This document shows positions 11,667-27,276 of a stretch of DNA of 64,000 nucleotides, piece by piece. The translations under genes were made by a program, and so were the position numbers. Each line of letters opens with the position of its first letter. The stretch's first letter is position 1. The notes under the pieces are model-generated. The model saw only the letters and a program-made list of their open reading frames with translations, did no database searches and was not told the origin of the DNA. The stretch spans positions 1-64,000 of the IMG/VR virus record IMGVR_UViG_3300020473_000013, one strand, 5' to 3'.

Positions 11667-12476
11667 TCACATGTCTTCGACGTTTTCTGTGGGGTAGTGT
11701 CTGTTAGCCCCCCATATTAAACGGACGGCTCCCGAGCGACCGGGACTGCCAGGTTCAACCCAATTGCTGCTTCCAGAATAGCCTCCGCCTCCGCGGCCAT
11801 ACCCTCCTGCATCGTATCGTCCGTAGACTCCTATCCCTGTGCCGTAAGAGTTGTTAGAACCTACGTAGTTACCCGCGCCTCCGCCGTAACCTGCTCTCGA
11901 ACTTACGTGGCTGCCATCGTTATACGTTCTTTGACCGTCCTGCCCATCTCCTCCACCAATGAGATCGACGATAAGCGGCGTACCTCCGCCTCCGCTGCCT
12001 CCGTTTCCGCCTCTGCTTGCACCTCGCTGGCCTCCGTGCGCTTCTATAATTACGAGTCCGTTATGTTCTATGCTGCTAGTGCCTCCGTCTCGCCCTACGA
12101 CAATCTTCAAACTGTCTCCTTCCGAGACCGGAAACTCCCAAATCCAACGTAGAGCACCGCCTCCTCCTCCTGCACCCTTGTACGCACTGTATCCGCTACC
12201 TCCATCACCTCCCCCTCCTATAACGACACCAGACATGAACGGAACGTCTTTCGGGACGTCCATATAATACGTCCCGGGTGCTGTGTACTTTGCCTGCCCT
12301 ATAGGAATAGGCTTAACGGGAACGTCGCTCCAGTCTCCTCGGCTCGACAGCTTGAAGATGGTGTTATTAACAACAAGCTGGTTAGGAGAAGGAGAATTTG
12401 GTAGCTCTTCCGTAGTTGGAATCCTAAATTCCTTTAGGGTCCCTCCTATTAGCTTTGTGTCTCCGTCGTGTATCAT
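11667..12476 (-). CDS. Array member: shared N-module plus Gly-rich domain (subfamily A)
   Basis: MIHDGDTKLIGGTLKEFRIP N-motif; poly-Gly body; C-terminal GAVRLIWGANRHYPTENVEDM. Confidence 0.8.
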   Translation of the reverse strand: MIHDGDTKLIGGTLKEFRIPTTEELPNSPSPNQLVVNNTIFKLSSRGDWSDVPVKPIPIGQAKYTAPGTYYMDVPKDVPFMSGVVIGGGGDGGSGYSAYKGAGGGGGALRWIWEFPVSEGDSLKIVVGRDGGTSSIEHNGLVIIEAHGGQRGASRGGNGGSGGGGTPLIVDLIGGGDGQDGQRTYNDGSHVSSRAGYGGGAGNYVGSNNSYGTGIGVYGRYDAGGYGRGGGGYSGSSNWVEPGSPGRSGAVRLIWGANRHYPTENVEDM

Positions 12477-13456
12477 ATATCACCTGTGTTCGTCGTAGGA
12501 AACGCCCTGTCATCACCCCAGATTAAGCGAAGCCCTCCGTGTCCATATCCGCCTCCGCCGAAGTGTTGGTTTCCTACATAGGAGCTATCAGAGGGATCGG
12601 AACCTCTATACCCTTGTCTGTTGGCGCCTGCTCCACTAGGACCCTCGCCGTTCAAACCAACACCTCCACCTGTTTGACTGTATGCTCCTGAACTGCCCGA
12701 ACCTCCTCCACCTGAACCAGCACGCCCGTCGGAGTAATCGGTTCCACCGGCACCGCCATTACCTGAGTAACCTCCTGCGCCGCCTGAACCTCCGCGTCCT
12801 TTACCTCAACGGCCATTAGCTCCGCTACCTCCATCACCTCCTCCATCATTAGCCTGGAGAGCGTTCTTACCTCCCAGCCCTCCTGCGCCACTTTGTCCCG
12901 AAGAGCTGCTGTTTTTGGGAGCGCCTTTGCCTCCGCCTCCTAGTACGAGTATTTCATCCGTAGACGGACGGCGTAGAAAAGTGTCACCTCCATCCTCACT
13001 GTCTCTATTATACGTGCCAGATGCACCGTAGTCTCCGACGACAACTTCAAGTTCTTCGCCTGGCTCCACGTCTATGTAGTTACGATAACCTAGGCCACCA
13101 CCACCTGCGCCGCCTCCGTACCAGTAAAGACCGCTCCCATAAGGATTGGGACCTCCCTGCCTGTTAGGTCCTCCGCCTGCACCAACCGCTACACCGTTTA
13201 TACGTGGAACGCCATTCGGTACGATAAACGTGTATGTACCGGGCGAGGTGAACTCAATTTGACCTGGGGGTATTGGACGCGTCGGAATAATTGACCACCC
13301 TCCTTCCTCTGCATTGGACGGGTCGGCTCGGCGCAAAGCTCCGTTATACACCTTTAGCAGGTTCGGTGGAGCATCTGCAGGAAGATCGGTTGTTTCTCGA
13401 ACAGATAAGTCTTTTATTGACCCGCCTATAAGACGAGTCTCTCCTTCATTTATCAT
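12473..13456 (-). pseudogene. Array member (subfamily A) interrupted by a single in-frame TGA at 12806-12808
   Basis: Track ORFs 12806..13456 and 12473..12655 are in the same frame; ...GANGR-TGA-GKGRGGSGGAGGYSG... stays open to the family C-terminal motif GGLRLIWGDDRAFPTTNTGDI. Confidence 0.8.
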
Positions 13457-14337
13457 ACATCACCCGTGTTAGTATTGGGAAAGTGCCTGTCCTCTCCCCA
13501 AATTATACGGACGCCGCCTTTGCCTCCGTCATTAGTGTAGTCACCCGCACCACCTCCGAAGTTGCCTGGCCTCGTGTGGCTACCTCTAGTGCCTCCGGAA
13601 CCGCCGTGGCCTCCAGCGTATGCTCCTGAGGAAGTTCCACCCGAAGCACCGCTAGTTCCCTCTCCCATTAAGCCAACACCTCCACCTCCGCCGCCCCATG
13701 TGCGGTTGTAATAGTAGGAGCCGCCGCCTCCTGCACCACCTCCCGTTCCCGGTAATCGTCCTCGGCCGCCGTCGCCGGAGTAGCCACCTGCCCCTCCGCC
13801 TGAGCCTCGATAGTACATCCCACCGTTACCTCCTCCTATATACGGGGAGAAAGTGGAGCTTCCTAAGCGACCTCCGCCCGATGCGACCAGTAGGTCGGTC
13901 GACCCTCTACGTATGAGGCTGTTGTGTCCGCTACGGCCCCCGTTGCTGCCACTCTCTTTTCCTCCTGCACCAGCAATGATTGTCAATGTTTCACCGGGCG
14001 TGACTTGAAGGAAGTTGCCGTACCTGAGATCGCCTCCTTTGCCTCCTCTCGATTCTCTTATGCCGGCAGCGCCTGCACCTACGCAGACAGCGCAGATAGA
14101 ATAAACGCCGTCTGGAACTGTCCATGAGTATACTCCAGGATCGTCCCACATCACCTGACCGGGAGGAGCTAGATAGGGCGGCAAGTCCTCAAACACGCCC
14201 TCCGACTTTGCACGACGCAACACCCCGTTTAATGCTCCGAGTTGGTTGGGTACTCCTACTTCATTTTCTGCTAAGTCTGGAAGTTTCAAGTCTGCGAGAG
14301 ACCCTCCTACGAGCTGTATCCTTCCGTCATGTATCAT
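13453..14337 (-). CDS. Array member: N-module plus Gly-rich domain (subfamily A)
   Basis: MIHDGRIQLVGGSLADLKLP; ends GGVRIIWGEDRHFPNTNTGDV; ATGA overlap with the next gene. Confidence 0.8.
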   Translation of the reverse strand: MIHDGRIQLVGGSLADLKLPDLAENEVGVPNQLGALNGVLRRAKSEGVFEDLPPYLAPPGQVMWDDPGVYSWTVPDGVYSICAVCVGAGAAGIRESRGGKGGDLRYGNFLQVTPGETLTIIAGAGGKESGSNGGRSGHNSLIRRGSTDLLVASGGGRLGSSTFSPYIGGGNGGMYYRGSGGGAGGYSGDGGRGRLPGTGGGAGGGGSYYYNRTWGGGGGGVGLMGEGTSGASGGTSSGAYAGGHGGSGGTRGSHTRPGNFGGGAGDYTNDGGKGGVRIIWGEDRHFPNTNTGDV

Positions 14338-15104
14338 TCTTCAACCTCCAGAATGGGTCTCCAGTCACTGCTGGCCCACGAAGTTAGGTACAGTGAGCTA
14401 TCCGTAAACGAGTTGCGTCCAAGAGCATACGGAGGATACACACCGTGCTGCCGGCCTCCCGAGAGAGTGCGCGTTATCGTGGGGCGGTGGCCGACCGCTA
14501 CTCGTGTCGTGGACGTGTCGAACGAGTCAAACTCTCCAGTATGACACCACACAATTAGGTCCCATTCATCCTTATCAATGAGCCTGACCTTGTAATCAAA
14601 ACCTTTTATGGTGATGCGCGTATCCTGGATAACTCTGGCTTCAGGCCACTGGTCTAACCCGCTGAGGGACAGATAAGAGTCGTTTCCGTATGTTAATCCA
14701 GCTTCGTATAAATCTTCCCAGGCCACTTGAGTGGATACGGGTCCTGTGGGTATGAACAGCATCTTTCCTTCGTGTTCAATTTTCCACCAGAGGTTTACTG
14801 GGGAGACGAGATTACCGAAAGGGAAGACTGCGTGGAAGTCGGAGTATGTTATTAAGTCAGACCCGCTAACGGTTCCAAAATACTTTGAACCGTTATGCCG
14901 TGTAACAGGCGATAGTGCGCCCGGCAAGTTCTTCACTAAATCTCGGATTGCGCTCCAGCCGGACTGCTCGTTAGATCGCTTGAGCTTGTTGCCATGTATC
15001 AAGAGCTGGTTTCTTGGAGGAGAATCAGGTAAGGTGTTTTGTTCCGGCACACGCAGCCGGGCAATTTCCCCTCCTAATAAGTGTGTTTTTCCGTCATGAA
15101 TCAT
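14334..15104 (-). CDS. Array member: N-module plus subfamily C domain (ends WRPILE)
   Basis: Start moved to MIHDGKTHLLGGEIARLRVP (ATG 15104). Confidence 0.75.
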   Translation of the reverse strand: MIHDGKTHLLGGEIARLRVPEQNTLPDSPPRNQLLIHGNKLKRSNEQSGWSAIRDLVKNLPGALSPVTRHNGSKYFGTVSGSDLITYSDFHAVFPFGNLVSPVNLWWKIEHEGKMLFIPTGPVSTQVAWEDLYEAGLTYGNDSYLSLSGLDQWPEARVIQDTRITIKGFDYKVRLIDKDEWDLIVWCHTGEFDSFDTSTTRVAVGHRPTITRTLSGGRQHGVYPPYALGRNSFTDSSLYLTSWASSDWRPILEVEE

Positions 15105-15108
15105 TCCA

Positions 15109-15768
15109 TCACCTGTTGTTTGTTGCAGGGTCAGCACCGAGAATCCAGTCCCCCGCGCGCAACTCTACCCTAGCACTGCCAGGATTGTTCGCGTTTCCTA
15201 AGCAGTGCTGGAGCGTATCGCCGATAGTAACATAGGGGTTGTTGGTGGCTTGCCGACGCACCCACGTTCCGCCTCCGTACTTGCCGTACTCCTCGTCGTG
15301 TGTGCGCTGCAGGAACACGGGCATCTGGTCCAAGTCGCGCGGTTTCTTGATGAGGACGTAACTGGCGCTGTCCGTGCCCCAGCTCAGGCCTCCGATGTCT
15401 AGCTCAGGCACCTCGTCGGGGCCCCAGTCCTGATCGTTGTTGCGCCAAGACTCAACGGCCGTGTAGTACGCCTCCAGTCCGATCTCCTGCACAGCGGCAC
15501 GGTAGTCCTCCTCATAGCGGATGGAGTGTGCGTTCTCCAACTGGCCTACAACGATGTCAGCCCAACCTTCCGTCTCGTGGTTGATGTGACGAAAGACGAA
15601 CATGGCGCTGGATACAGGAAGTGATACCCAATCGTTATCAGTACGGTGCTGGAGCATATCTCCATTCATCGCAATGGCGTTCTTGACATCTTCAGGAAGC
15701 TGCCCCTTACTAGGAACGGACAGCTCGTCAACGTCTCCTCCTATCAACCGCATCTGATCTATATTCAT
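15109..15768 (-). CDS. Array member: N-module plus unique acidic domain
   Basis: MNIDQMRLIGGDVDELSVP; C-domain unrelated to the other members. Confidence 0.75.
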   Translation of the reverse strand: MNIDQMRLIGGDVDELSVPSKGQLPEDVKNAIAMNGDMLQHRTDNDWVSLPVSSAMFVFRHINHETEGWADIVVGQLENAHSIRYEEDYRAAVQEIGLEAYYTAVESWRNNDQDWGPDEVPELDIGGLSWGTDSASYVLIKKPRDLDQMPVFLQRTHDEEYGKYGGGTWVRRQATNNPYVTIGDTLQHCLGNANNPGSARVELRAGDWILGADPATNNR

Positions 15769-15776
15769 GGGTTCAC

Positions 15777-16433
15777 CTAATACGCCAAAACTATTATGCC
15801 GCGGTCACCGTCGGTGTCTTCGGCCCCGCCGTTCCCTGCTTTGACAAGTCCTATTACGGGGACGTTTCCTTCTGCTCCCGCGCCGGGGGAGAATCTCGAA
15901 GGAGGAGGATTGCCGTTAGCTACATTGCCTTCACCGCCAGAAGCTACAGAGGTTGAGTTTCTGCCAGCCTGACCGCCGCCGGCTAAAGCGTGCTGTTGAC
16001 CGTTGTGCGTGACATAGGAAGAGCCTCCGCCTGAGCCCAAGTAGCTGTTCCTCCAATTTACTTCACCGCCTTTACCTACAGTCAAACTGATCTGGTCGCC
16101 AGGCTCAACGTCTAACTGTGCGTAAGACAAACCTCCGCCGGCACCTGCTACCCAGTTAGCACTACCGCTTGAGTTATAGTTGACGCCTGCACCGCCGCCT
16201 CCACCACAAGCAACGAACAGAGCGTACACGTTATCCGGCACCGTAAAGGTTGTTGAGGAAAAGAAGGATGCTTTAGCCGCAACAAAATCCCAGTCGTCGT
16301 TGCGTCCGACCATGAGCATTCCGTTGCTGCGACCTATAAACCCTAGAACTGGAGTCTCAGGCATGGAAGCTACATCCGGAATTCGGATGTAACCCATCGA
16401 GCCTCCTATCAGATTGGCATTCTCAATATTCAT
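15777..16433 (-). CDS. Array member: N-module plus short Gly-rich domain (subfamily A-like)
   Basis: Probable start MNIENANLIGGSMGYIRIP (ATG 16433); TFTVPDNV..LFV.C.GGGG motif. Confidence 0.75.
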   Translation of the reverse strand: MNIENANLIGGSMGYIRIPDVASMPETPVLGFIGRSNGMLMVGRNDDWDFVAAKASFFSSTTFTVPDNVYALFVACGGGGGAGVNYNSSGSANWVAGAGGGLSYAQLDVEPGDQISLTVGKGGEVNWRNSYLGSGGGSSYVTHNGQQHALAGGGQAGRNSTSVASGGEGNVANGNPPPSRFSPGAGAEGNVPVIGLVKAGNGGAEDTDGDRGIIVLAY

Positions 16434-16440
16434 AATTATA

Positions 16441-17460
16441 TCACTCCGCAATTTTGGTCACAGAAACCGTTCCGTGACTCGTGCCAACGCGGTTCTGTCT
16501 GATAACATTCGTTGCGCTCTCGCCAATAAAAGAAGTGCTGTACGATGTTCTTCCTCTGTACTGAGCTGCACCCGTAGACTCGGAACCTCCAGAGAAGCCT
16601 CCTCCGCCGGAACAGTACTGGTTGTGTACGTTGGAGCCGCGACCTCCGCCTCCTCCAAAGCCTCCGTCTCGTGTTCCAGTTCCACCCCATGCTAATTCCG
16701 ACAGACTGAGCCCTCCATTGTCCTGCGGCGCATTAGAGAACCAGCTACCTCCTGGTCCTCCTATATCGACCCTACCGCCGGCCACATAGTAAGGGTCTCC
16801 GGCGGTAAAGGCGGTAGCGTCCACGATGTTTGGCGCTCCACCGTCGCTGTAGTTGCCTCCTCCTGCACCCCCTCCTGCTAGGATCAACGGGAACGTCTGA
16901 CCTTGTATCTGTGCAAAGGAGGCGCCTCCTCCTGCACCTCCTCCTCCTTGACTGCCTGTTCCGATTCCTCCGTTGTCTGCACCTGCTTGACCTACGACGA
17001 TACGCAATTTGTCACCTTTACTGAGCAGGAACACTCCTTCCAGCATGGCTCCGTGCCCGAAATGATTGTACGCTGCAGGTCGCCCTCCTCTAGCTCCGAC
17101 TGCACGGATTCGATATGCACCGTCTGCAGGGATGGTCCAAATTTGGGAGCCGTTCTGAACGTCGAAAAAGAGAGAGTCGTTAGCCCAGACAGATGCTTCA
17201 TCACTGGTATAGCTTGTCACGCACTGAGTCAGTGTTGGTCCGTATCTTCCGGTCGATCCTGCCGTTGTAAATGTGTGTGATGAGAACTCGAACAGTCCTG
17301 CTGTTGTAGGTAGAAGAACTACCTCTCCGCTTTGTCCGTTCTTAAAGCCTATTGAACCTTGCGATGCGACGATTGCTCCCGGCAATTCGTCTCCCTTATA
17401 CGCTGGGATGGAGATACGTCCTATGTCTCCTCCAACCAGTTTAACATCATCAAAATACAT
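16441..17460 (-). CDS. Array member: N-module plus ALK/LTK-like Gly-rich domain (subfamily B)
   Basis: Start moved to MYFDDVKLVGGDIGRISIP (ATG 17460); WTIP..G.Y.I.A.GARGG...GA.L.G.F.L..G..L.I.VGQ.G motif. Confidence 0.78.
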   Translation of the reverse strand: MYFDDVKLVGGDIGRISIPAYKGDELPGAIVASQGSIGFKNGQSGEVVLLPTTAGLFEFSSHTFTTAGSTGRYGPTLTQCVTSYTSDEASVWANDSLFFDVQNGSQIWTIPADGAYRIRAVGARGGRPAAYNHFGHGAMLEGVFLLSKGDKLRIVVGQAGADNGGIGTGSQGGGGAGGGASFAQIQGQTFPLILAGGGAGGGNYSDGGAPNIVDATAFTAGDPYYVAGGRVDIGGPGGSWFSNAPQDNGGLSLSELAWGGTGTRDGGFGGGGGRGSNVHNQYCSGGGGFSGGSESTGAAQYRGRTSYSTSFIGESATNVIRQNRVGTSHGTVSVTKIAE

Positions 17461-17461
17461 A

Positions 17462-18244
17462 TCACACGTCCTGTACGTTAGTGGTTGGAAAGGAACGACC
17501 CTCGCCCCAGATAATGCGGATACCGCCGTCATCCCCTGGACTGCCTCCGGATTGAGGCCAACCGCCGTTGCCTCCGCCTCCTGCGATTATGCCGACTTGT
17601 GAGCCTCCACCGGAGCTACCGCCGTAGGATAGGCCGTTGTGATGGCTAGATTCACCTCTATCTCCCGCGTCCCCTGTTTTGTACGTACCCGTACCTCCAG
17701 GACCTCCATCGCCTATCGCGAACATGCCTAAGGAGTCTTCGCCTGCGGTTCCCCCTGAGGCTTGAGTGACGACAGTGTTGTCGGCGTCGCGACGGAAAAT
17801 CGTGTTTCCTCCGTCTGCGTCGGATGAACCGCCGTGACCAACAATAGCAGTGAACGTCTCCCCAGGTTCTACGACAAGGAAGTTCTCGTAGGATTCGCCT
17901 CCGGCTCCGCCGGCTCCGCCTACCTGATCGTAGTAACTGCTCCCTCTATTCGATCCTCCACGGCCGCCTCCGCCGCCTGCTCCTATAACGAACACGCTAA
18001 TCTGCGTGACGCCGTCAGGAACCGTAAATGTAAACGAACCTCCGTTTGCGTAATTGATTTGGCCTGGAGGAATAGGCTTCGTAGGAACGACATCCCACAC
18101 GTTGTCAGGTTTGGCTCTACGTATGGAGCCGTTTTTTACCATAAGCAGATTCTCCTGCGCCACAGAAGGAAGCTCTGGTGTGTTTGGTATAGAGAAGGAA
18201 CGTATTGATCCTCCGGACAGTTTGATACCGCCATCCATATTCAT
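17462..18244 (-). CDS. Array member: N-module plus Gly-rich domain (subfamily A)
   Basis: MNMDGGIKLSGGSIRSFSIP; ends GGIRIIWGEGRSFPTTNVQDV. Confidence 0.8.
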   Translation of the reverse strand: MNMDGGIKLSGGSIRSFSIPNTPELPSVAQENLLMVKNGSIRRAKPDNVWDVVPTKPIPPGQINYANGGSFTFTVPDGVTQISVFVIGAGGGGGRGGSNRGSSYYDQVGGAGGAGGESYENFLVVEPGETFTAIVGHGGSSDADGGNTIFRRDADNTVVTQASGGTAGEDSLGMFAIGDGGPGGTGTYKTGDAGDRGESSHHNGLSYGGSSGGGSQVGIIAGGGGNGGWPQSGGSPGDDGGIRIIWGEGRSFPTTNVQDV

Positions 18245-18255
18245 GAGTTCACCTT

Positions 18256-19688: not shown

Positions 19689-20389
19689 TCTACTAGCTCC
19701 AAGACGGGTCTCCAACGTAGGTATTGGTACCCGTTGGAACTTGCGACATTCGGATTACCGCGGTTGGCGTAGTTGTTATCTCCTAGCAAACAGGTGCTAT
19801 ACAGGTTGTCTCCAACGTCAATCTCGGCAGGGTCGTAGGACGCCCAGCGCTGGTCAACAGATACCGGGCTGTCGCTGCTGATCATATACATTAGGTCGTC
19901 CCATTCCTGGTCAGTTAGGAGGCGTACCTTGTATGTATCCGAACCTATAGCCAGTGTGGTGTTACCGTACACCAAATCCTTGTTCTTGAGAGTGCTCCAC
20001 CCTATATTGTTTCCTGCGTGACTAGCTCGAATAATCATCTTCGAGTAGAACAGGACCTTATCGCTGTGTGCGAACTTCAACCAATCTGTGTCTCCTCCGA
20101 ATAACTTGCCGGCATACATGCCTAGCTCGCCGCAAAGCGTAGAACCGTCGATCAAGTCCAAGTTACTCACTACACCGAAGAAGCCTGCAGACATGGTACC
20201 GCCTATCAGCTCCGAAGCTCCGGGACCTACGAAACCTAGATTAGTCGGCAGGGAGACCCAGGCTTGACCGTGGGCAACTGCTATACGGCCATTGGTAACT
20301 CCTAGTTTATAAGGTTCAGCCTCGCTTACATCGGGAAGCGACATCCTTCCTATATCACCTCCAACCAACCTTGTCTTGTCGAGTATCAT
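19685..20389 (-). CDS. Array member: N-module plus subfamily C domain
   Basis: Start moved to MILDKTRLVGGDIG (ATG 20389); ends WRPVLELVE. Confidence 0.78.
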   Translation of the reverse strand: MILDKTRLVGGDIGRMSLPDVSEAEPYKLGVTNGRIAVAHGQAWVSLPTNLGFVGPGASELIGGTMSAGFFGVVSNLDLIDGSTLCGELGMYAGKLFGGDTDWLKFAHSDKVLFYSKMIIRASHAGNNIGWSTLKNKDLVYGNTTLAIGSDTYKVRLLTDQEWDDLMYMISSDSPVSVDQRWASYDPAEIDVGDNLYSTCLLGDNNYANRGNPNVASSNGYQYLRWRPVLELVE

Positions 20390-21195
20390 TCCTCCACCTC
20401 CAGTACAGGGCGCCACCCTCTATAGCTGCTTGCATCATCGGCACTTCGGAAGTAAGTATCATACGCAGAATTGACACCATGAAGTAGTCTGTCAGGACCT
20501 TTGGACTCCTGGCACCATGTTTGGCCACTGTTGATAAATCCCATGTCTCTATCTGAGAATGAGGCCCATGTGCCGTCTGTCGTAGGAACGATCAGCTTTG
20601 TCCATTCAGAATCGCTCAAGGATGAATGCCGCGTATCCGTCTCGTCTTGAGCATTTGAAGGATCATCGGACGAACCCGTCAGCAAACGTACCTTATACGT
20701 TATGTTCCCGATTGTCACGCGCCCGCTCTGCCTTCTCTGCGTTCCCGAGGGAAAGCGACCGTACGTGTCGTCGCCGTACACTAGACCTAGCAGGTAAAGC
20801 TGTTCCCAAGATACTCCGGTCTTGATGCCCCGCTGAGCCACGAATAAGGTGCGCCCGTTGTGAGCGTACTTGAACCACATTCCTACTGTATGGTCTTCTA
20901 CGAAGGCACCAGGCACACCCAGCTGGGAAGACAAATCTGAGTAGCTAATTAGATCGCTTTGCGGTATGTGTCCGAAATACCCAACGTCGCTATCACCGAA
21001 CGCTATCTTGGACGGGCCAGGACCTGCACCTAAGAGGGAAGCGGACGGTATGTTGCTCCAATTCAAGTCTTCTGTCGCTACGCCTAGGCTTCCTCCCGCC
21101 ACACCCAATTCGTTGGTACTGGGGTTAGTCGATCTTTCTGGCAAGGATAAAAAATCAACGTCTCCGCCGACCAGTTTCATACGTTCGAGTTTCAT
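20386..21195 (-). CDS. Array member: N-module plus subfamily C domain
   Basis: Start moved to MKLERMKLVGGDVD (ATG 21195); ends GWRPVLEVEE. Confidence 0.78.
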   Translation of the reverse strand: MKLERMKLVGGDVDFLSLPERSTNPSTNELGVAGGSLGVATEDLNWSNIPSASLLGAGPGPSKIAFGDSDVGYFGHIPQSDLISYSDLSSQLGVPGAFVEDHTVGMWFKYAHNGRTLFVAQRGIKTGVSWEQLYLLGLVYGDDTYGRFPSGTQRRQSGRVTIGNITYKVRLLTGSSDDPSNAQDETDTRHSSLSDSEWTKLIVPTTDGTWASFSDRDMGFINSGQTWCQESKGPDRLLHGVNSAYDTYFRSADDASSYRGWRPVLEVEE

Positions 21196-22022
21196 TGTAC
21201 CAACTCCAGAACGGGTCTCCATCCGCAAATATCTGTGTGTGTAGTTGATGACCTGCGCGTCATATCCGACACTCCGTTACATCCTCTGGATATGTAGGCT
21301 CCAGTCCCAGCGCCTTGTTCCTCTTGGCACCAACTATACGTGCCGTGTCCTAATGAAGTGTGGACGTGTAAGTCTCTATCTGAGTATCGTGCCCAATCAC
21401 CGTCAGTAATTCCTTCGGACTCTAAAGTATCGCTTGAACTGATAGATACTCCACTGGCGATATGGTACATCAGACTATTCCATTCCGACCCGTGTGTCGT
21501 GGGCAGATCGTACCCCCAAGGAGGAGATGTTAGGGCAGGATTATAGCGCGATCCACTAGGCAAGCGAACTTTGAACGTTACCCCGTCGATAACCACTTCG
21601 GCCTCTCCGAATACGGCACCTACCGCATCTATGCTGTCCCAACTAAGACCGTAACGCAAAGGTTTTTTAGCGTAGTAAAGGACTTTATTTTTGTAGGAAA
21701 ACTTTAACCACCCTGCATTTGAAAACTGCGAGGTTCCTGAATATAGTCCTATAGCGTCAGACAGGGAGTTTCCGCTAATCAATTCGTCCGCGGCCACCTC
21801 TCCGAAGAACCCAGCCGACGCATCTCCTCCTATGAGTTGTTGGGGACCAACACCGTTACGCTTAGTGTGGATTGTGGTCCAATTGTCGTTCTTGCCCAAT
21901 CTAAGGCCACCTTGGTGTCCGAGTAGTTCGTTCTCTGACACATCGACAGGAAGCGTACTCACATTAGGTACAGATATGTCGGCAATGTCTCCTCCAACCA
22001 ACTTCATTCTATCTAGTTTCAT
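21192..22022 (-). CDS. Array member: N-module plus subfamily C domain
   Basis: MKLDRMKLVGGDIADISVP; ends GWRPVLELVQ. Confidence 0.8.
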   Translation of the reverse strand: MKLDRMKLVGGDIADISVPNVSTLPVDVSENELLGHQGGLRLGKNDNWTTIHTKRNGVGPQQLIGGDASAGFFGEVAADELISGNSLSDAIGLYSGTSQFSNAGWLKFSYKNKVLYYAKKPLRYGLSWDSIDAVGAVFGEAEVVIDGVTFKVRLPSGSRYNPALTSPPWGYDLPTTHGSEWNSLMYHIASGVSISSSDTLESEGITDGDWARYSDRDLHVHTSLGHGTYSWCQEEQGAGTGAYISRGCNGVSDMTRRSSTTHTDICGWRPVLELVQ

Positions 22023-22033
22023 ATCTCACCTTT

Positions 22034-23068
22034 TCAATCCAAACGGGTAACTGATACCCAACCGTTACCGCTATTAGAATTGGCTACGTTATGTTGGTTG
22101 GAGCCAGAATTGTAGGAGCCTCCACCGCCTCCTCCGTTACGTCCGTCGGGATTCCCACCAAAATTAGAGTCGTAGTCGCCTCCGCCTCCTCCGGAATAAC
22201 CTCCACCTCCTCCGGCGCCGTGAGAGTCCACGCCTAAGCCTCCTCCTCCGAATCCTGCTTGTTGCTTATAACCGGAGTTGGTAAATCTTCCTGTGAAAGA
22301 TAGCGACTGGCGCATGGACGTCCAGCCTAGAGCACCGTCCGCGTATAAGGCATTTCCGCCGTTTCGTCCTCGGTTGAACAACGACGTAGCCCGAGAAGTG
22401 GTTCCGTCTACAGACGTTGTGCCTCCAACACCTATCAGATTTGCCGTAGAGTAACTGGTGTTGATTATAGCGGAGCCGCCTCCACCGCCTGCTACGATCA
22501 AAGGATTCGAGGCACCTTGCAACCATACGAACGAACCTCCGCCGCCAGGACCGCCTCCATTCGCACGATTACCCTCAATGTTTTCGAGCCCTTCTTGGCC
22601 CACTACAATGCGTAGTTGTTGCCCCTTGACCAGGTCGAAGGTGCCTTCCATGATAGCGCCTTTACCTCGATACGAGTCCGGGACGACTCCGCTAGAGGAG
22701 TTAGGTTTGCCTCCTCTAGCGCCTGCGACTTCTAACTTATACGATCCTGTAGCTGGAACTGTCCACGTCTGAATCCCAGAAGTTACCTCAAAAAGAGTAG
22801 GGTCGTCAGACCAGTCAGAGCTATATGCCGTTCGCAAAGCCTGAGCGCTGGGAGGAAGAGGTCCTGATCTACCTGCTGAGGTGAACACATGGGATGAAAA
22901 AGCGAACAGAGTAGCACCAGGAATGATTGATACTTCGCCTGAATCGTTCACGAACCCTGGGGTCCCTTCTCGAAGGGCGATTTGGTTTTTCTCATTGGAG
23001 TTCGTCTCACGCAATGACAAACCTCTAATAGAGCTGCCTACTAAATTGACCCCGCCTTCAAACTTCAT
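22034..23068 (-). CDS. Array member: N-module plus ALK/LTK-like Gly-rich domain (subfamily B)
   Basis: Start moved to MKFEGGVNLVGSSIRGLSLR (ATG 23068) after GGAGG. Confidence 0.78.
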   Translation of the reverse strand: MKFEGGVNLVGSSIRGLSLRETNSNEKNQIALREGTPGFVNDSGEVSIIPGATLFAFSSHVFTSAGRSGPLPPSAQALRTAYSSDWSDDPTLFEVTSGIQTWTVPATGSYKLEVAGARGGKPNSSSGVVPDSYRGKGAIMEGTFDLVKGQQLRIVVGQEGLENIEGNRANGGGPGGGGSFVWLQGASNPLIVAGGGGGSAIINTSYSTANLIGVGGTTSVDGTTSRATSLFNRGRNGGNALYADGALGWTSMRQSLSFTGRFTNSGYKQQAGFGGGGLGVDSHGAGGGGGYSGGGGGDYDSNFGGNPDGRNGGGGGGSYNSGSNQHNVANSNSGNGWVSVTRLD

Positions 23069-23081
23069 ACGGCCTCCAAAC

Positions 23082-23116
23082 GAAAAAGGGCGCAGATCAC
23101 GAAGACCCACGCCCTA
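23082..23116 (-). terminator. Intrinsic terminator after mini-protein pair
   Basis: Minus strand AGGGCGTGGGTC-TTCG(T)-GATCTGCGCCCT then TTTT. Confidence 0.7.
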
Positions 23117-23121
23117 GACTA

Positions 23122-23313
23122 TTAGACCACAGGGTCGCTGTCGGTCAACCACTTCCATGTAGACTCGCTGTACATGTACAGGCCAGGAGCGTTGTCGCCA
23201 TCCTGTTGCAACAGGTACACCAGAGCGTTCGCGTCAGGATCAGACGGGAGCTTATCTACGTTATCAGCCACCAGCGTGCTGGGGCCGTCGAACAGTGCGT
23301 TATCTACCAGCAT
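23122..23313 (-). CDS. Mini-protein B1 (63 aa), paralogue of 26658..26855
   Basis: Start moved to MLVDNALF (ATG 23313) after AAGGAG; pattern shared with B2: MLVD...NV..LP....(A/S).VY.....G..PG.Y......W. Confidence 0.75.
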   Translation of the reverse strand: MLVDNALFDGPSTLVADNVDKLPSDPDANALVYLLQQDGDNAPGLYMYSESTWKWLTDSDPVV

Positions 23314-23326
23314 GTCTTGGTCTCCT

Positions 23327-23503
23327 TTACGCAGGCATTTGAAGTAAGCGCCATGCAGAATCATGGCAATAGACACACAGACCGTGCTCGTCATGAACAA
23401 ACAACTGGCCCACGAGTGCGCTTTCAGGGAAGGTGGGACCTCCTTCCGAAATCAGTTTAGAATACCGATTGTCCCCTAGATCGGTTACACCGTCGAAGTT
23501 CAT
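23327..23503 (-). CDS. Mini-protein A1 (58 aa; not in ORF track), paralogue of 26865..27011
   Basis: Hand translation MNFDGVTDLGDNRYSKLISEGGPTFPESALVGQLFVHDEHGLCVYCHDSAWRLLQMPA*; AGGAGG RBS. Confidence 0.8.
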   Translation of the reverse strand: MNFDGVTDLGDNRYSKLISEGGPTFPESALVGQLFVHDEHGLCVYCHDSAWRLLQMPA

Positions 23504-23531
23504 GGTTGTGACCTCCTATGTTGAGTCGAGT

Positions 23532-23538
23532 TAAATTA
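23532..23538 (-). promoter_or_regulatory. TAATTTA putative late-promoter motif
   Basis: Intergenic, 29 nt upstream of ATG 23503. Confidence 0.5.
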
Positions 23539-23548
23539 TCCTGAATTG

Positions 23549-24595
23549 CTAGAGACGGACCACGGATATATAGCCTTCTCCACTGTTTGCTCCGGCTGAG
23601 TTCGATTGGACTTCACCGGCGTTGAAGCTGCCCCCTCCGGTAGGAACAACACCGTTGAGGCGGCCCGACTGTCCGAGCGTTCCGCCTATTCCTCCGCTGT
23701 ATCCTCCTCCGCCTCCTGCACCTGAGTTATCCGTGAAGGCCGCACCTCCTCCGAAACCTCCGTAACCTCTGCCGTAGTTAGGATGGTGTTCAACGCCTCC
23801 GGCAGCTCCGTTCCTCGGAGCGGAGCCCGGGTCACCAGGAGGGTTTCTAATGTGATGCCCTCGCTTTCCGTCCGTTAACCACCCTCCTCCTCCAGAACCA
23901 GTAGAGTATCTACCTATATTAGCTCCGCTGTTCCCTCCGTGTCCAGCAGTTGCCTTAGGTCCTGAACCACCACCGATGCTATTTGTAGGCTCCTCTGTAG
24001 CTGATCCTGGGCCTCCCGCTGATCTTTCGGCATGTCCACCTCCTCCGCCTGCGACAATCAGAGGTTGGACATCTGAGGCGTCAAAGAATACGTATGACCC
24101 GCCTCCGCCTCCTGCACCAAAGTCGGAATTCTGAGACGTTACGGCGCCTCTCTTGCCTACCAAGATTCGTACAGTATCGCCCTTTGACAGCCAAAAGTCT
24201 CCTCGAATGATAGCTCCAGCACCACCTCGATCTCCGCCTCCTTTCGCGCCCGCTGTTTCGATTCTGTACATTCCGGTTTTAGGAACTGTCCATATTTGAA
24301 CACCGTTCTCTACGCGGAACAGCGAAATGTCGGTCGTCCAAATCAAATTCGAGTAAAGCGCCTCGAATACCGAAGGCAAGCTAGCAGTTCTACCTTCACT
24401 GTGCCCTGCGGCAAACACATGAGAGGAAAATTCGTATATGATGGCCGGAGGTAAAGGCAGGTTTTCATTGCCGCGGCGAACAGCAAATTTACCTTGGCTA
24501 AACCCAAGCTCTCCGTTTAAAGCGGGCTCTGTGACAGGTACAGACAGTTTTTGTATGGAGCCTCCACTCAGTCTAATCCCTCCTTCCAGTTCCAT
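23549..24595 (-). CDS. Array member: N-module plus ALK/LTK-like Gly-rich domain (subfamily B)
   Basis: MELEGGIRLSGGSIQKLSVP; QIWTVPKTGMYRIETAGAKGG. Confidence 0.8.
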   Translation of the reverse strand: MELEGGIRLSGGSIQKLSVPVTEPALNGELGFSQGKFAVRRGNENLPLPPAIIYEFSSHVFAAGHSEGRTASLPSVFEALYSNLIWTTDISLFRVENGVQIWTVPKTGMYRIETAGAKGGGDRGGAGAIIRGDFWLSKGDTVRILVGKRGAVTSQNSDFGAGGGGGSYVFFDASDVQPLIVAGGGGGHAERSAGGPGSATEEPTNSIGGGSGPKATAGHGGNSGANIGRYSTGSGGGGWLTDGKRGHHIRNPPGDPGSAPRNGAAGGVEHHPNYGRGYGGFGGGAAFTDNSGAGGGGGYSGGIGGTLGQSGRLNGVVPTGGGSFNAGEVQSNSAGANSGEGYISVVRL

Positions 24596-24604
24596 ATTAT
24601 ACCT

Positions 24605-25669
24605 CTATAGTCGCGTGATTATCACCTTACCGTGGCCAGGGTTGGCTCCCGTCTGGTTCGTTTGATTACTGCCGGAGTTATAACTACCACCACCTCCACC
24701 TAACTGGTGGTTCGCTCCTGCACCTCCAGAGTACCCGCCACCTCCTGCTCCGCCTCCGGAACTACCGTGCGTAGCTCCGCCTCCTCCAAAGCCTCCATCC
24801 GCAGGACCTTGATAGCTGAGGCCGTAACTCCTATAGATTGTCTGTCCTCCTAGTCCGCCATATCGGAAGGCTCTGGGGCCAGGAGATTTTGTATAGTTGC
24901 TGTGAGAGGAATTTCCGTAAAATCCAGCCCCTGGCTCACCACCCTTGGTATCGTTTAGCGATCCTGCAGCGCCTCCAGACCCTCCTCGACCAAAACCCGA
25001 CGGGCTAGAGTCCCCACCCTTGGTTGAGTTCAATCCGTGCTGTCCGTTTCTAGCTGACCGGCTGGAGTTATCCATACCTCCGCCCCCTCCAGCTATAATC
25101 AAAGGCGAAGAATTGCCGGGGCTTGACCCTATCGCAACGAACGTGCCTCCTCCGCCCGCTGCGGAGTTGTGGTCAGACCGTTCGTAGTCTCCGTCCCCTC
25201 CTCTTTGTCCTACGAGAAGAAGCAATGTGTCTCCTTCCTCTAGCTGAAAATCGCCGGCCATCTTGGCGCCAAGTCCCCCTGTTCGGAGTCCGGACCCTGT
25301 CATCCCTGCTCCACCTTGAGCTCCGCAAACTTCTATCCTATACATGCCTGTGATAGGCACTGTCCAGTATTGGATGCCTCCTTCTACCTTAAAAAGCGAA
25401 GTGTCGTCTACCCAATCCACGCCCGCGTAAGCATTCCTACATTGAGTAAGAGAGGGTCCTGTGCGACCTGAGGCCCCAGCAGCAGTGAACATGTGGTAAT
25501 CGAAGTTGTACAGACCGCGTAAAGGAAGCGGTACCCACGCGTCACCGCGCCCCACACCCAGACCATTCTGCCCGACGCCGAGTTGGTTGTTTTTCACACT
25601 GACCGTCTTACTCGGAATGGTTAAACTTCTCAGGCTCCCTCCTACCAACTTTACCCTATCGTGTTCCAT
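24605..25669 (-). CDS. Array member: N-module plus ALK/LTK-like Gly-rich domain (subfamily B)
   Basis: Start moved to MEHDRVKLVGGSLRSLTIP (ATG 25669). Confidence 0.78.
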   Translation of the reverse strand: MEHDRVKLVGGSLRSLTIPSKTVSVKNNQLGVGQNGLGVGRGDAWVPLPLRGLYNFDYHMFTAAGASGRTGPSLTQCRNAYAGVDWVDDTSLFKVEGGIQYWTVPITGMYRIEVCGAQGGAGMTGSGLRTGGLGAKMAGDFQLEEGDTLLLLVGQRGGDGDYERSDHNSAAGGGGTFVAIGSSPGNSSPLIIAGGGGGMDNSSRSARNGQHGLNSTKGGDSSPSGFGRGGSGGAAGSLNDTKGGEPGAGFYGNSSHSNYTKSPGPRAFRYGGLGGQTIYRSYGLSYQGPADGGFGGGGATHGSSGGGAGGGGYSGGAGANHQLGGGGGSYNSGSNQTNQTGANPGHGKVIITRL

Positions 25670-25680
25670 AGTAACGATCT

Positions 25681-26661
25681 CTACATATTTTCGTGAACGA
25701 AAAACACCTTTCCTGTCAAGGGGTTGCGTACTAACGCGGGCCATCCTATGCGTTCACTCAGTTTATCAGAGGATTCGCCCCATTGTCCGTTGGCTCCACT
25801 AACCAGCCTGTTACTCTCCATACTAAAGAGGCGCTGGGCCGAGTCAGGTTGTTGTACATTCAAGTAGGTCGATCCGCTCTGACTGTACGTATAAAATCCG
25901 TAGCGAGCCTTTCCTGCGAACATAGATAGCTCGGGATGCTCGCCCAAATCCAATGTCAGAGGACCTAATTCAGCACTCGTATTGTACTGAGTGGCGGTCA
26001 CGGTGAAAAGGTTGCCTTGTCGAACAATACGAACGTCAGACCACCTTCCAGACCATCTGGAATATGTGGAAGCATTGATGCCTGCAAGCTCAGTACGCCC
26101 GCTGCTCACCGCCGGATTATAATACGATAGAGCGAACGAACTTCCAGGGATACCTCCTTGGTGCCGAGTAACTAGCAGCATGTGCGGGTTACCGTCAACG
26201 ATGACGGCAGCCATTACCAGGCCTATCATGTCGTCGTCGCTGTTATTCGACGTGAGGCGCGCGGAGAACTCATAGGCTTCGTACTGGTACAGGCTTAGGA
26301 TGGCGTTCGGGGTACCTACGTTTGTCGGCATGACAAAAGACCCGATTCCTTCATCGTAATACCAATCGTCCGCGTACCCTCCGTAGTTCGATCCCGCCTC
26401 ATAGAAGGTAGAACCGTGAGTACGCGGCCATGTATCAAACACGGTTTTCAGACCCGGCGCCGGATTATCCGCCATATACTGGTCTAGTTCGGCATCTGAC
26501 TCAAAAACAAACTCATCGAATTGAGGAAGTTCTTGCAAGGGAAAGGAAGCCAAGCGACCGTTGCTAAACGCCAACTTGTTGCCCGCTTGTACGTCGGGAG
26601 GGCTTTGAACAGTGGGCACTTCCATGTTCTCCATTTTTGTACGCGCCTGCTCGATTATCAT
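25681..26661 (-). CDS. Array member: divergent N-module plus lectin-like domain shared with the 1096-aa protein
   Basis: Start moved to MIIEQ (ATG 26661, ATGA overlap); NSDDDMIGLV motif. Confidence 0.72.
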   Translation of the reverse strand: MIIEQARTKMENMEVPTVQSPPDVQAGNKLAFSNGRLASFPLQELPQFDEFVFESDAELDQYMADNPAPGLKTVFDTWPRTHGSTFYEAGSNYGGYADDWYYDEGIGSFVMPTNVGTPNAILSLYQYEAYEFSARLTSNNSDDDMIGLVMAAVIVDGNPHMLLVTRHQGGIPGSSFALSYYNPAVSSGRTELAGINASTYSRWSGRWSDVRIVRQGNLFTVTATQYNTSAELGPLTLDLGEHPELSMFAGKARYGFYTYSQSGSTYLNVQQPDSAQRLFSMESNRLVSGANGQWGESSDKLSERIGWPALVRNPLTGKVFFVHENM

Positions 26662-27011: not shown

Positions 27012-27016
27012 GTTAT

Positions 27017-27193: not shown

Positions 27194-27211
27194 GCTAGGC
27201 TCCCAGAAACT

Positions 27212-27244
27212 AAAAAGGGCACGAGGAGCAAGGCCCCCGCGCCC
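27212..27244 (-). terminator. Intrinsic terminator
   Basis: Minus strand GGGCGCGGGGG-CCTTG-CTCCTCGTGCCC then TTTTT, after the 27277 stop. Confidence 0.65.
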
Positions 27245-27276
27245 ATAGTCACAGGTTTGGGCCCTGTGCAATCGTC

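What the first reader, a model, noticed from the sequence alone, without database searches (positions are those of the whole stretch)
11667..26661. Tandem array of 17 modular paralogues: one shared N-terminal module, many interchangeable tip domains
Every gene opens with about 50 aa of pattern M-x-(D/E)-x1-3-L-(V/I/S)-GG-(D/S)-(I/L)-x2-(L/I)-x-(V/I/L)-P ... W-x2-(L/I)-P (most divergent in 25681), then switches to one of at least six passengers. These are Gly-rich subfamily A (5 copies including a short variant), ALK/LTK-like Gly-rich subfamily B (4), WRPxLE subfamily C (5), CBM35-like (1), lectin-like (1) and unique (1). A related N-terminus heads the probable major fibre proteins at 27511 and 28185. 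Genes are mostly translationally coupled. Inference: a plug-and-play repertoire of adhesins that dock on one fibre/whisker or capsid site, giving heterogeneous virion surfaces. Whiskered 'hairy' myoviruses are known morphologically, but I cannot place this phage taxonomically from the window alone.
Basis: partly seen in the sequence, partly recalled or inferred. Interest (0 to 1): 0.88.

Follow-up and report, generated by a model that had tools for sequence, protein, structure and literature searches.

The report
Seventeen modular fibre-tip genes in tandem
A marine giant phage carries 17 back-to-back genes that all start with the same ~55-residue module and then switch to one of six kinds of binding domain. 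This is most likely a kit of interchangeable host-binding heads anchored on the virus tail: a known design principle, here in an unusually large, undescribed form.

Summary
Seventeen minus-strand genes (11667-26661) are packed with ATGA overlaps or gaps of 1-11 nt. All open with a ~55-aa N-module: a leave-one-out HMM gives E<=4e-7 for 16, and E=0.016 for 25681..26661.

The window is the start of a ~225-kb Tara Oceans jumbo-phage genome. It is distantly related (32-53% aa) to the PaBG/Lu11/Y3 'hairy myovirus' clade.

The N-module matches no Pfam or PHROG family and is very rare: 31 hits among 1.84 billion representative proteins, about half of them from this phage. It is probably homologous to the N-terminus of the conserved fibre protein 27511..28110 (hhalign 85%).

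The passengers are fibre-tip-type domains:
- Gly_rich_2, with a fold like the Bxb1 tail tip and Pam3 fibre
- ALK-type TNF-like/Gly-rich
- CBM6/35-like
- a domain shared with chimallivirus virion proteins
- a copy of the tip of the phage's own 1096-aa fibre

Related strains differ by a swapped and expanded gene cassette that starts at a gene start and ends at the end of an N-module.

Best reading (confidence 0.55): virion-displayed adhesins on a shared anchor. Docking itself is untested. Novelty: new variant of a known kind.

The parts
25681..26661 (-). Array gene 1 (326 aa). It has the most divergent N-module. Its passenger is a copy of the C-terminal tip of the 1096-aa fibre-like protein 34898..38188.
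   Evidence: Leave-one-out HMM E 0.016. BLASTP 38% identity over 286 aa, E 6e-65, to residues 809-1092 of 34898..38188. Matches phrog_21285 and phrog_33406.
24605..25669 (-). Array gene 2 (354 aa), class B: N-module plus an ALK/LTK-type TNF-like/glycine-rich domain.
   Evidence: PF12810 at 34.9 bits against a cut-off of 24.5. Leave-one-out HMM E 6e-13.
23549..24595 (-). Array gene 3 (348 aa), class B.
   Evidence: phrog_22713 E 5e-34. 42-46% identical to the other class B members. Leave-one-out HMM E 2e-10.
23327..23503 (-). Mini-protein X2 (58 aa): a stand-alone module resembling the fibre-2 N-terminus.
   Evidence: ORF. Conserved in L009, L015 and L029. hhalign to the fibre-2 N-termini gives 88% probability.
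23122..23313 (-). Mini-protein Y2 (63 aa): corresponds to the N-terminal ~60 aa of the PaBG gp226 / Y3 gp094 family.
   Evidence: Conserved in L009, L015 and L029.
23087..23115 (-). Terminator-like hairpin (12 pairs plus a T-run) directly upstream of gene 23068.
22034..23068 (-). Array gene 4 (344 aa), class B.
   Evidence: PF12810 at 44.5 bits. ALK TG-domain chains in the PDB at E 6e-12. Leave-one-out HMM E 4e-7.
21192..22022 (-). Array gene 5 (276 aa), class C (GPGP...GFxGEV...WRPxLE domain). It marks the upstream edge of the strain-variable cassette.
   Evidence: AF2 pLDDT 91.6. BFVD fold hits to chimallivirus virion structural proteins, E down to 1e-23. In L008 and L009 the N-module is 76-89% identical but the passenger only 43%.
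20386..21195 (-). Array gene 6 (269 aa), class C. It lies inside the variable cassette.
19685..20389 (-). Array gene 7 (234 aa), class C. In strain L009 the passenger is 97% identical but the N-module only 65%.
18834..19688 (-). Array gene 8 (284 aa), class C.
   Evidence: phrog_1062 E 5e-46. Leave-one-out HMM E 2e-14.
18256..18837 (-). Array gene 9 (193 aa): N-module plus a CBM6/CBM35-like domain.
   Evidence: CBM_6 at 28.2 bits against a cut-off of 28.9; CBM_35 at 23.7 against 28.
17462..18244 (-). Array gene 10 (260 aa), class A (Gly_rich_2).
   Evidence: PF21722 at 43.5 bits.
16441..17460 (-). Array gene 11 (339 aa), class B.
   Evidence: PF12810 at 25.9 bits.
15777..16433 (-). Array gene 12 (218 aa), class A, naturally short (profile positions 5-140 of 226).
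   Evidence: PF21722 at 37.6 bits.
15109..15768 (-). Array gene 13 (219 aa): N-module plus a passenger with no detectable relatives.
   Evidence: Leave-one-out HMM E 7e-15. No Pfam, PHROG or PDB match.
14334..15104 (-). Array gene 14 (256 aa): class C passenger carrying a class-A-like N-module.
   Evidence: Its N-module is closest to that of gene 12476 (44%). Its passenger is 25-33% identical to class C members.
13453..14337 (-). Array gene 15 (294 aa), class A.
   Evidence: PF21722 at 36.3 bits. AF2 pLDDT 90.5. Fold hits to the Bxb1 tail tip and the Pam3 fibre.
12473..13456 (-). Array gene 16, class A, interrupted by an in-frame TGA at 12806-12808. The 216-aa product ends there. The frame stays open to 12473 and would then ATGA-overlap gene 12476.
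   Evidence: The identical stop is present in at least four other Tara assemblies.
11667..12476 (-). Array gene 17 (269 aa), class A. Last member of the array.
   Evidence: PF21722 at 25.9 bits. Leave-one-out HMM E 1e-14.
26865..27035 (-). Mini-protein X1 (56 aa), a paralogue of X2.
26658..26855 (-). Mini-protein Y1 (65 aa). Its stop ATGA-overlaps the start of gene 26661.
27217..27244 (-). Terminator-like hairpin (11 pairs, 8 of them G-C, plus a T-run) between the fibre genes and the X1-Y1 pair that heads the array.
27511..28110 (-). Conserved ~200-aa fibre protein ('fibre-2'; PaBG gp228, Y3 gp097, phrog_21918). Its N-terminus is the probable ancestor or partner of the N-module.
   Evidence: phrog_21918 E 2e-62. 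hhalign of the N-module against its N-terminus: probability 84.7%, 53 columns aligned from residue 1.
28185..29894 (-). Conserved 569-aa virion fibre protein ('fibre-1'; PaBG gp229, Y3 gp098).
   Evidence: phrog_16122 E 1e-135. tblastn gives 37-53% identity to proteins annotated as virion structural.

Best explanation
The array encodes 17 small two-part proteins that are displayed on the virion as alternative host-surface binders.

The anchor. The first ~55 residues comprise a conserved opening strand (M-K-x-[DE]-x3-L-x-GG-x-[IM]-x2-L-x-[LIV]-P) and a three-stranded beta-meander ending in W-x2-[LIV]-P. This module is a diverged copy of the N-terminus of the conserved fibre protein 27511..28110. 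It places each protein on the same tail structure. The most likely route is co-assembly with fibre-2 N-termini and the stand-alone X mini-modules into a mixed oligomeric stem, as the phiKZ gp131-135 N-termini do.

The head. The remainder of each protein is a binding domain of one of six folds.

Expression. Tight translational coupling should give roughly equal amounts of all members, so one particle would carry a mixed coat.

Evolution. The repertoire turns over by gene duplication, module shuffling and exchange of multi-gene cassettes between strains.

Shown: the shared module, its rarity, the passenger identities, the synteny and the strain mosaics. Inferred: virion location, the docking partner and mixed display.
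For: - The module is significant in 16 of 17 genes and absent elsewhere in the window.
- It is kept across six unrelated passenger folds. It occurs in 41 distinct copies from several metagenomic lineages, always at residue 1.
- hhalign to the fibre-2 N-terminus: 85% probability, colinear from Met1. The X minis match fibre-2 at 88%.
- The array sits directly downstream of the fibre genes, inside the tail/baseplate module.
- Class A folds like the Bxb1 tail tip and the Pam3 fibre.
- Class B is homologous to the ALK ligand-binding TG domain.
- Class C folds like chimallivirus proteins annotated as virion structural.
- Gene 26661 duplicates the tip of the phage's own large fibre, and one member is CBM6/35-like.
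- In other phages the class C domain follows fibre shafts, for example PF03406.
- In AF2 monomer models residues 1-20 have low confidence while residues 33-51 form a confident meander. This fits a strand that folds on docking.
- Strain L009 is ~100% identical on both flanks. It is replaced between the start of gene 22022 and the end of the N-module of gene 20389, and it carries one extra gene. L008 has three genes fewer.
- A second lineage, L028, has 7 of 7 consecutive genes with the module.
Against: - There is no direct evidence that any member is in the virion: no proteomics and no cultured host.
- No multimer prediction could be run, so the docking partner is a guess.
- The module is not detectable in PaBG, Y3, NCTB or three IMG/VR relatives. 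The conserved fibre proteins therefore function without it.
- The similarity to fibre-1 is not significant.
- The hhalign support for fibre-2 is moderate and rests on short, shallow alignments.
- One member is interrupted by a stop that is fixed in the sampled population, so not every gene is needed.
- N-module DNA identity between paralogues is only 60-80%. Where the cassette boundaries fall may reflect selection rather than mechanism.
Confidence: 0.55

Rival explanations
1. Each paralogue forms its own independent short fibre. The N-module is only a self-oligomerisation (for example trimerisation) or baseplate-insertion element that each protein uses separately. There is no shared or competitive docking and no mixed stems.
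For: Phage fibre N-termini commonly serve this role. L029 carries a 628-aa Peptidase_S74 fibre whose N-terminus resembles the module by eye. Within the window, N-modules are somewhat more similar within a passenger class than between classes (34% against 27%), as expected for whole-gene duplication.
Against: Seventeen separate attachment sites would be needed. The stand-alone X mini-modules have no head to display. The module is swapped independently of the passenger, both in gene 15104 and in the L009 homologue of gene 20389.
Confidence: 0.2
2. The products are monomeric tip adhesins in the manner of T2/S16 gp38. The N-module clips one adhesin onto the distal end of a trimeric fibre (28185 or 34898..38188). 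The 17 variants compete for that tip and set host range.
For: gp38 has an N-terminal attachment domain followed by a glycine-rich polyglycine-II domain, and it sits at the long-tail-fibre tip (PMC12892980; my own knowledge of Dunne et al. 2018). Classes A and B are glycine-rich.
Against: There is no sequence or fold match to gp38: phmmer and profile searches of the PDB are empty, and the fold hits are to Bxb1, Pam3 and ALK instead. The module resembles a fibre N-terminus, not a tip-binding domain.
Confidence: 0.12
3. The products are not surface proteins. The N-module is a targeting or propeptide signal that loads diverse cargo into the head, or marks it for ejection, like the conserved capsid-targeting sequence heading the polymorphic internal-protein genes of T4-type phages. 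Alternatively, the products act at the infected cell surface, for example in superinfection exclusion or as decoys.
For: Tandem, fast-evolving genes with a conserved N-terminal tag and variable bodies also describe the T4 internal-protein loci (my own knowledge). Residues 1-20 are poorly ordered in the models.
Against: The passengers are carbohydrate- or ligand-binding and fibre-tip folds, and one duplicates a fibre tip. The locus lies in the tail-fibre module, not the head module. The module is 55 aa with a folded meander and resembles a fibre N-terminus.
Confidence: 0.06

Closest known systems
phiKZ gp131-gp135 paralogous tail-fibre proteins (PMC13250141)
   Same: Neighbouring paralogues share an N-terminal segment and differ in their C-terminal domains. 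In phiKZ the shared N-termini co-assemble into a hetero-hexameric fibre base on the baseplate, and the C-terminal domains face the host.
   Different: No sequence relationship was detected. phiKZ has 4-5 large proteins (~770 aa for gp131), not 17 small ones (193-354 aa). In phiKZ the docking is seen by cryo-EM; here it is only inferred.
Chimallivirus DUF7941 'fibre cloud' proteins of phage Goslar (PMC13742148)
   Same: It is a multi-paralogue family (10 in Goslar) with a common assembly module. Some members are followed by carbohydrate-binding, hydrolase or LRR domains. The family is proposed to form heterogeneous host-recognition filaments through intermolecular beta-sheet docking.
   Different: DUF7941 is a larger globular module with a linker and is reported only from chimalliviruses. 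No Pfam family hit the N-module here. The Goslar genes are scattered, not in one coupled array.
T2/S16/PP01 gp38 adhesin at the long-tail-fibre tip (PMC12892980)
   Same: It is a small protein with an N-terminal attachment part followed by a glycine-rich receptor-binding domain. The variable regions determine host range.
   Different: There is one gene per phage, and no sequence or fold match was found. gp38 binds a fibre tip, whereas the module here resembles a fibre N-terminus.
Gly_rich_2 / ALK-LTK TG-type domains in solved phage tails: Bxb1 tail tip 9d93 chain Q and cyanophage Pam3 fibre 7ypx
   Same: The class A passenger model matches these chains (Foldseek E 4e-6 and 9e-6, probability 1.0). 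Class B matches ALK by sequence.
   Different: TM-scores are low (0.32-0.40). Those proteins are single tail components and do not carry this N-module.
'Hairy Myoviridae' of the PaBG/Lu11/Y3/Dickeya JA-AD1 clade (PMC6143709)
   Same: The window shares their baseplate and fibre genes and gene order at 32-53% aa identity. At the same position Y3 has a long run of small paralogous genes. The proteins that make the hairs are still unknown.
   Different: The N-module is not detectable in PaBG, Y3 or NCTB. The Y3 run is unrelated in sequence. The morphology of this uncultured marine phage is unknown.

Membership tests
Pfam PF21722 Gly_rich_2 (class A passengers) | Score at or above the Pfam gathering threshold (24.3 bits). 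| tested here: met
   Scores are 25.9, 36.6, 36.3, 37.6 and 43.5 bits for genes 12476, 13456, 14337, 16433 and 18244. Genes 13456 and 16433 cover only profile positions 1-140 of 226.
Pfam PF12810 ALK_LTK_GRD (class B passengers) | Score at or above the gathering threshold (24.5 bits), and homology to the solved ALK/LTK TG domain. | tested here: met
   Scores are 25.9, 44.5 and 34.9 bits for genes 17460, 23068 and 25669. ALK chains in the PDB match at E 6e-12. Gene 24595 misses the Pfam listing but is 42-46% identical to the other three.
CBM6 / CBM35 carbohydrate-binding modules (gene 18837) | Score at or above the gathering threshold. Sugar- and metal-binding residues. | tested here: inconclusive
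   CBM_6 scores 28.2 bits against a cut-off of 28.9, and CBM_35 scores 23.7 against 28. Both are just below threshold. The binding residues were not examined.
Chimallivirus 'virion structural protein' family (phiKZ gp083, PhiPA3 gp080-083, 201phi2-1 gp452/456; phrog_1062 and phrog_16120), for the class C passengers | Sequence and fold homology of the ~220-aa domain. | tested here: met
   phrog_1062 E 1e-46. tblastn gives 31-42% identity. Foldseek against BFVD gives E 1e-23 with TM 0.70. 'Virion structural' is the depositors' annotation. The domain's position in the particle is unknown.
C-type-lectin / FGE-like fold (class C passengers) | Significant structural match to solved CLec/FGE domains. 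| tested here: inconclusive
   The best PDB hits are TvpA, PorK, FGE and EgtB, but at E 0.13-0.8 and TM 0.25-0.30. A profile search of PDB sequences was empty.
phiKZ gp131-like fibre paralogues | A gp131-type N-terminal segment that builds the hetero-hexameric fibre base. | tested here: not met
   The N-module matches no Pfam or PHROG family, and tblastn of whole members finds no N-terminal match in cultured phages. The resemblance is one of design only.
DUF7941 fibre-cloud proteins | An N-terminal DUF7941 module. | tested here: inconclusive
   No Pfam hit for any member. I could not verify that the DUF7941 model is in the Pfam copy used.
gp38-type tail-fibre-tip adhesins | A gp38 N-terminal attachment domain plus a polyglycine-II sandwich. 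| tested here: not met
   No PDB sequence match for class A by phmmer or by profile. gp38 is absent from the significant fold hits.
PaBG/Lu11/Y3 'hairy myovirus' clade (membership of the phage itself) | Shared tail and baseplate genes and their order. Hairs along the sheath seen in EM. | tested here: inconclusive
   Gene content and order are shared at 32-53% aa identity. Morphology cannot be tested for a metagenomic genome.
Diversity-generating retroelement targets (often of C-lectin fold) | A template/variable repeat pair and a reverse transcriptase nearby. | tested here: not met
   The array has no long near-identical direct repeat; repeats are at most 61 nt at 60-80% identity. The rest of the window was not searched for a reverse transcriptase.

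The most novel reading that the evidence does not exclude
The N-modules of the 17 proteins, the N-terminus of fibre protein 27511 and the head-less X mini-modules co-assemble into mixed stems. A single virion would then carry a combinatorial coat, or 'hairs', of up to 17 different ligand-binding heads. The repertoire is re-dealt between strains by cassette exchange at module boundaries. This would name the hair-forming proteins of a marine branch of the hairy jumbo phages. It would also define a new, portable 55-residue docking module.
Probability: 0.3. Interest if true: 0.75.

Novelty: new variant of a known kind. Interest (0 to 1): 0.55.

Why it matters
Phage host range is set by receptor-binding proteins, and a conserved anchor with a swappable head is the principle used to re-target phages. 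This locus is an extreme natural case, with four notable features:
- Seventeen heads of six folds sit on one very small anchor.
- The anchor is absent from Pfam and PHROGs.
- Natural strains show gain, loss and replacement of multi-gene cassettes within almost identical flanks.
- Some passenger types (class C, and the unique passenger of gene 15768) have no solved structure.

If the anchor's partner is found, it would give a compact display tag for jumbo-phage tails. It would also give a testable candidate for the unexplained 'hairs' of a widespread jumbo-phage clade. In addition, the locus links the ALK-type glycine-rich domain and Gly_rich_2 to a repeated role as phage adhesin heads.

Tried and rejected
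- Megablast of the array against 50,697 phage records found nothing.
- A word-indexed search with the N-module of gene 20389 returned only the phage's own protein.
- The HMM found no N-module in the PaBG, Y3 or NCTB loci, nor in three IMG/VR relatives of fibre-2. The idea that the module is common to the hairy clade was dropped.
- The Y3 run of small genes at the same position is unrelated. It consists of whole-gene paralogue pairs.
- The Y mini-proteins are not significantly related to the N-module or to either fibre N-terminus.
- The N-module against fibre-1 is not significant.
- Class C and class A profiles find no PDB sequence relatives. The C-lectin/FGE fold for class C remains only a weak lead.
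- Adjacent genes do not have more similar N-modules than distant ones, so there is no sign of recent local homogenisation.
- A sequencing or assembly error as the cause of the stop in gene 13456 was rejected. The same TGA is in five other Tara assemblies.
- Literature searches found no description of this family.

Full report

Seventeen genes lie on the minus strand between 11667 and 26661.
- With the ATG just upstream of the motif taken as the start, neighbours overlap by ATGA six times and are 1-11 nt apart eight times.
- There are two larger gaps. One is 480 nt (23549 to 23068) and holds two small conserved genes. The other is 329 nt and follows an in-frame TGA in gene 13456.

I built an HMM from the first 58 residues of 16 members and scored the seventeenth, for each member in turn.
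- E-values ran from 4e-7 to 5e-17, taking the 615 six-frame segments of the window as the database.
- The exception was 25681..26661, at E = 0.016 and 10.7 bits.
- No segment outside the family exceeded 6.5 bits.

**2. Where does the window come from?**

The window is positions 1-64000 of IMGVR_UViG_3300020473_000013, a contig of 224,853 bp.
- Contigs of 224,770 and 224,903 bp from other Tara Oceans assemblies, where they overlap the window, are 100% identical to it. This is probably a complete marine jumbo-phage genome.
- The flanking genes are baseplate wedge, tail proteins and fibres.
- Their closest cultured relatives, at 32-53% aa identity, are Pseudomonas phages PaBG and Lu11, phage NCTB, Erwinia phage Y3 and the Dickeya solani jumbo phages.
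- This is the clade called 'hairy Myoviridae'. The proteins that form its hairs are reported as unknown (PMC6143709).
- The gene order fibre-1 (28185), fibre-2 (27511), 73-aa protein is shared with PaBG, Y3 and NCTB. What follows differs in each phage.

**3. What are the passengers?**

*Class B.* It passes the Pfam threshold for the ALK/LTK glycine-rich domain. It also matches the solved ALK ligand-binding TG domain at E 6e-12.

*Class A.* It passes the threshold for Gly_rich_2.
- An AlphaFold2 model of gene 14337 (pLDDT 90.5) matches the mycobacteriophage Bxb1 tail tip (9d93 chain Q, E 4e-6) and the cyanophage Pam3 fibre (7ypx, E 9e-6). ALK/LTK follow.
- TM-scores are only 0.3-0.4, so this is a domain-level resemblance.

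*Class C.* The model is good (pLDDT 91.6).
- It has no significant PDB match. The weak top hits are all of the FGE/C-lectin type.
- It matches predicted structures of many chimallivirus proteins annotated as virion structural, from PhiPA3, Noxifer, EL, RSL2 and 201phi2-1, at E down to 1e-23.
- In metagenomes the same domain also follows unrelated fibre shafts, for example Phage_fiber_2.

*The other three.*
- The passenger of gene 26661 is a paralogue of the last 285 residues of the phage's own 1096-aa fibre-like protein 34898..38188 (38% identity, E 6e-65).
- Gene 18837 is CBM6/35-like, just under threshold.
- Gene 15768 has no relatives.

The passengers are thus, as far as they can be identified, distal binding domains of phage tails.

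**4. What is the N-module?**
- No Pfam or PHROG family matches it.
- A profile search of 1.84 billion representative proteins found 31 proteins at E<=1e-3. About half of them are this phage's own.
- In every other hit but one (P0031, the weakest, E 9.7e-4, matched at residues 203-232) the match lies at the N-terminus. Those hits are fused to class A, B or C, to an RCC1 propeller or to other domains.
- With copies from related contigs there are 41 distinct modules. The consensus is M-K-x-[DE]-x3-L-x-GG-x-[IM]-x2-L-x-[LIV]-P ... P ... N-x-L ... G ... W-x2-[LIV]-P.
- Profile-profile comparison with the N-termini of the fibre-2 family gives 84.7% probability (P 6.6e-6), with 53 columns aligned from Met1. 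With fibre-1 the probability is only 12%.
- In both AlphaFold models residues 1-20, the best conserved part, have low confidence (pLDDT 45-78). Residues ~33-51 form a confident three-stranded meander. I read this as a strand that needs a partner, but that is inference.

**5. The mini-proteins and the transcription units**

Two pairs of small genes belong to the locus: X1 and Y1 (26865..27035, 26658..26855) and X2 and Y2 (23327..23503, 23122..23313).
- X resembles the fibre-2 N-terminus (hhalign 88%) and has no head.
- Y corresponds to the first 60 residues of the ~190-aa PaBG gp226 / Y3 gp094 family. It is not significantly related to the other modules.
- The order class B, X, Y, next gene recurs in L009, L015 and L029.
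- Strong terminator-like hairpins lie at 27244-27217 and 23115-23087. They suggest units of fibres | X1-Y1 plus three genes plus X2-Y2 | fourteen genes. These are pattern matches only.

**6. Variation between strains and lineages**

*L009* (8.2 kb, a different sample):
- It is ~100% identical to the window from 23554 to about 22000, and again from about 20160 to 16804.
- Between those points it is 60-85% identical or unalignable, and it carries one extra class C gene.
- The divergent block runs from the start codon of gene 22022 to the end of the N-module of gene 20389.
- Accordingly, the L009 homologue of 22022 keeps 76% identity in the module but only 43% in the passenger.
- The homologue of 20389 keeps 97% in the passenger but only 65% in the module. 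That module's first codons match the module of the neighbouring gene 19688.

*L008* (another Tara sample):
- It has a 22022-type module (89%) on a 43%-identical passenger.
- This gene is followed directly by an 18837-type module. That makes one class C gene where the window has four and L009 has five.

*Within the window:*
- Modules are more alike within a passenger class than between classes (34% against 27%; none of 5000 permutations reached the observed difference). This fits mostly whole-gene duplication.
- Gene 15104 is an exception: it joins a class-A-type module to a class C passenger.

*Other lineages:*
- L028, continued by L014, has seven of seven consecutive genes with the module. 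It ends in the same downstream genes as the window.
- L004 has only one such gene.

DNA identity between paralogous modules is only 60-80%. I therefore do not claim that the modules themselves are the recombination substrates.

**7. Mechanism and rivals**

I commit to virion-displayed adhesins that share an anchor (0.55). The more specific picture is that the modules co-assemble with fibre-2 N-termini and the X minis into mixed stems.
- Rivals that keep the adhesin idea are independent homomeric fibres (0.20) and gp38-like tip adhesins (0.12).
- A rival outside the virion surface is a targeting tag for packaged or cell-surface proteins (0.06). It fits neither the passenger folds nor the location of the array.

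None of this can be settled without multimer prediction, proteomics or imaging, and none of these were available.

**8. Comparison with what is known, and novelty**

A conserved N-terminal anchor with variable distal domains is a familiar design.
- The nearest parallels are the phiKZ gp131-135 hetero-hexameric fibre base (PMC13250141) and the Goslar DUF7941 'fibre cloud' (PMC13742148).
- The family here is not a member of either, and it is not gp38-like.

What is new:
- the module itself;
- the size and compactness of the array;
- the mix of six passenger folds;
- the documented cassette turnover between natural strains.

I rate it a new variant of a known kind, with interest 0.55.

**9. Limits**
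- The fibre-2 homology rests on short profiles.
- 'Virion structural' labels are depositors' annotations.
- Strain comparisons rest on two short contigs.

Noticed in passing
window 12806-12808 (gene 12473..13456, minus strand): An in-frame TGA cuts a full-length Gly_rich_2 gene to 216 aa. The frame stays open for another 111 codons and would end in an ATGA overlap with the next gene. The same stop is present in five other Tara assemblies, so it is not an assembly error. The truncated product is about as long as the naturally short paralogue 15777..16433. Whether this is a pseudogene, a usable short form or leaky read-through is open.
   Followed up: partly
window 26658-27035 and 23122-23503: A duplicated pair of mini-genes (X of 56/58 aa, Y of 65/63 aa) heads the array and recurs inside it. 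X resembles a fibre-2 N-terminus without a head. Y is the N-terminal part of a ~190-aa protein conserved in PaBG, Y3 and NCTB. The pair is conserved in three other contigs.
   Followed up: partly
window 34898-38188 and 25681-26661: The C-terminal ~285 residues of the 1096-aa fibre-like protein are duplicated as the passenger of the first array gene (38% identity).
   Followed up: yes
window 10495-11586; P0018 on L016:864-1883: The gene just downstream of the array is a seven-blade-type RCC1 propeller (WD40_RLD, 277 bits) without the N-module. In another metagenomic phage an RCC1 propeller does carry the module.
   Followed up: partly
proteins P0033-P0125 and P0128-P0148: In many other phages, including Erwinia phage Deimos-Minion gp135, both class A and class C domains are headed by a different short N-terminus of the form M-[LF]-E-[LM]-L-L. 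This may be a second, independent shared tag for the same passenger types.
   Followed up: no
L002:22304-36560 (Erwinia phage Y3 gp096-gp079): At the position matching the array, Y3 has about 17 small genes made of whole-gene paralogue pairs. They have no sequence relation to the window's family.
   Followed up: partly
window 27217-27244 and 23087-23115 (minus strand): Two strong terminator-like hairpins with T-runs. The first lies inside the mechanical ORF 27017..27271, which is therefore probably not a gene.
   Followed up: no
L020 and L023, against window 19628 and 20023: Two independent Tara assemblies of the same phage break their contigs inside the array, close to the strain-variable cassette. 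This would fit population heterogeneity at that point.
   Followed up: no
L029:2808-4694: A 628-aa fibre with a Peptidase_S74 C-terminal chaperone domain follows the module-bearing genes. By eye, its N-terminus resembles the module/Y pattern, but the HMM does not detect it.
   Followed up: no
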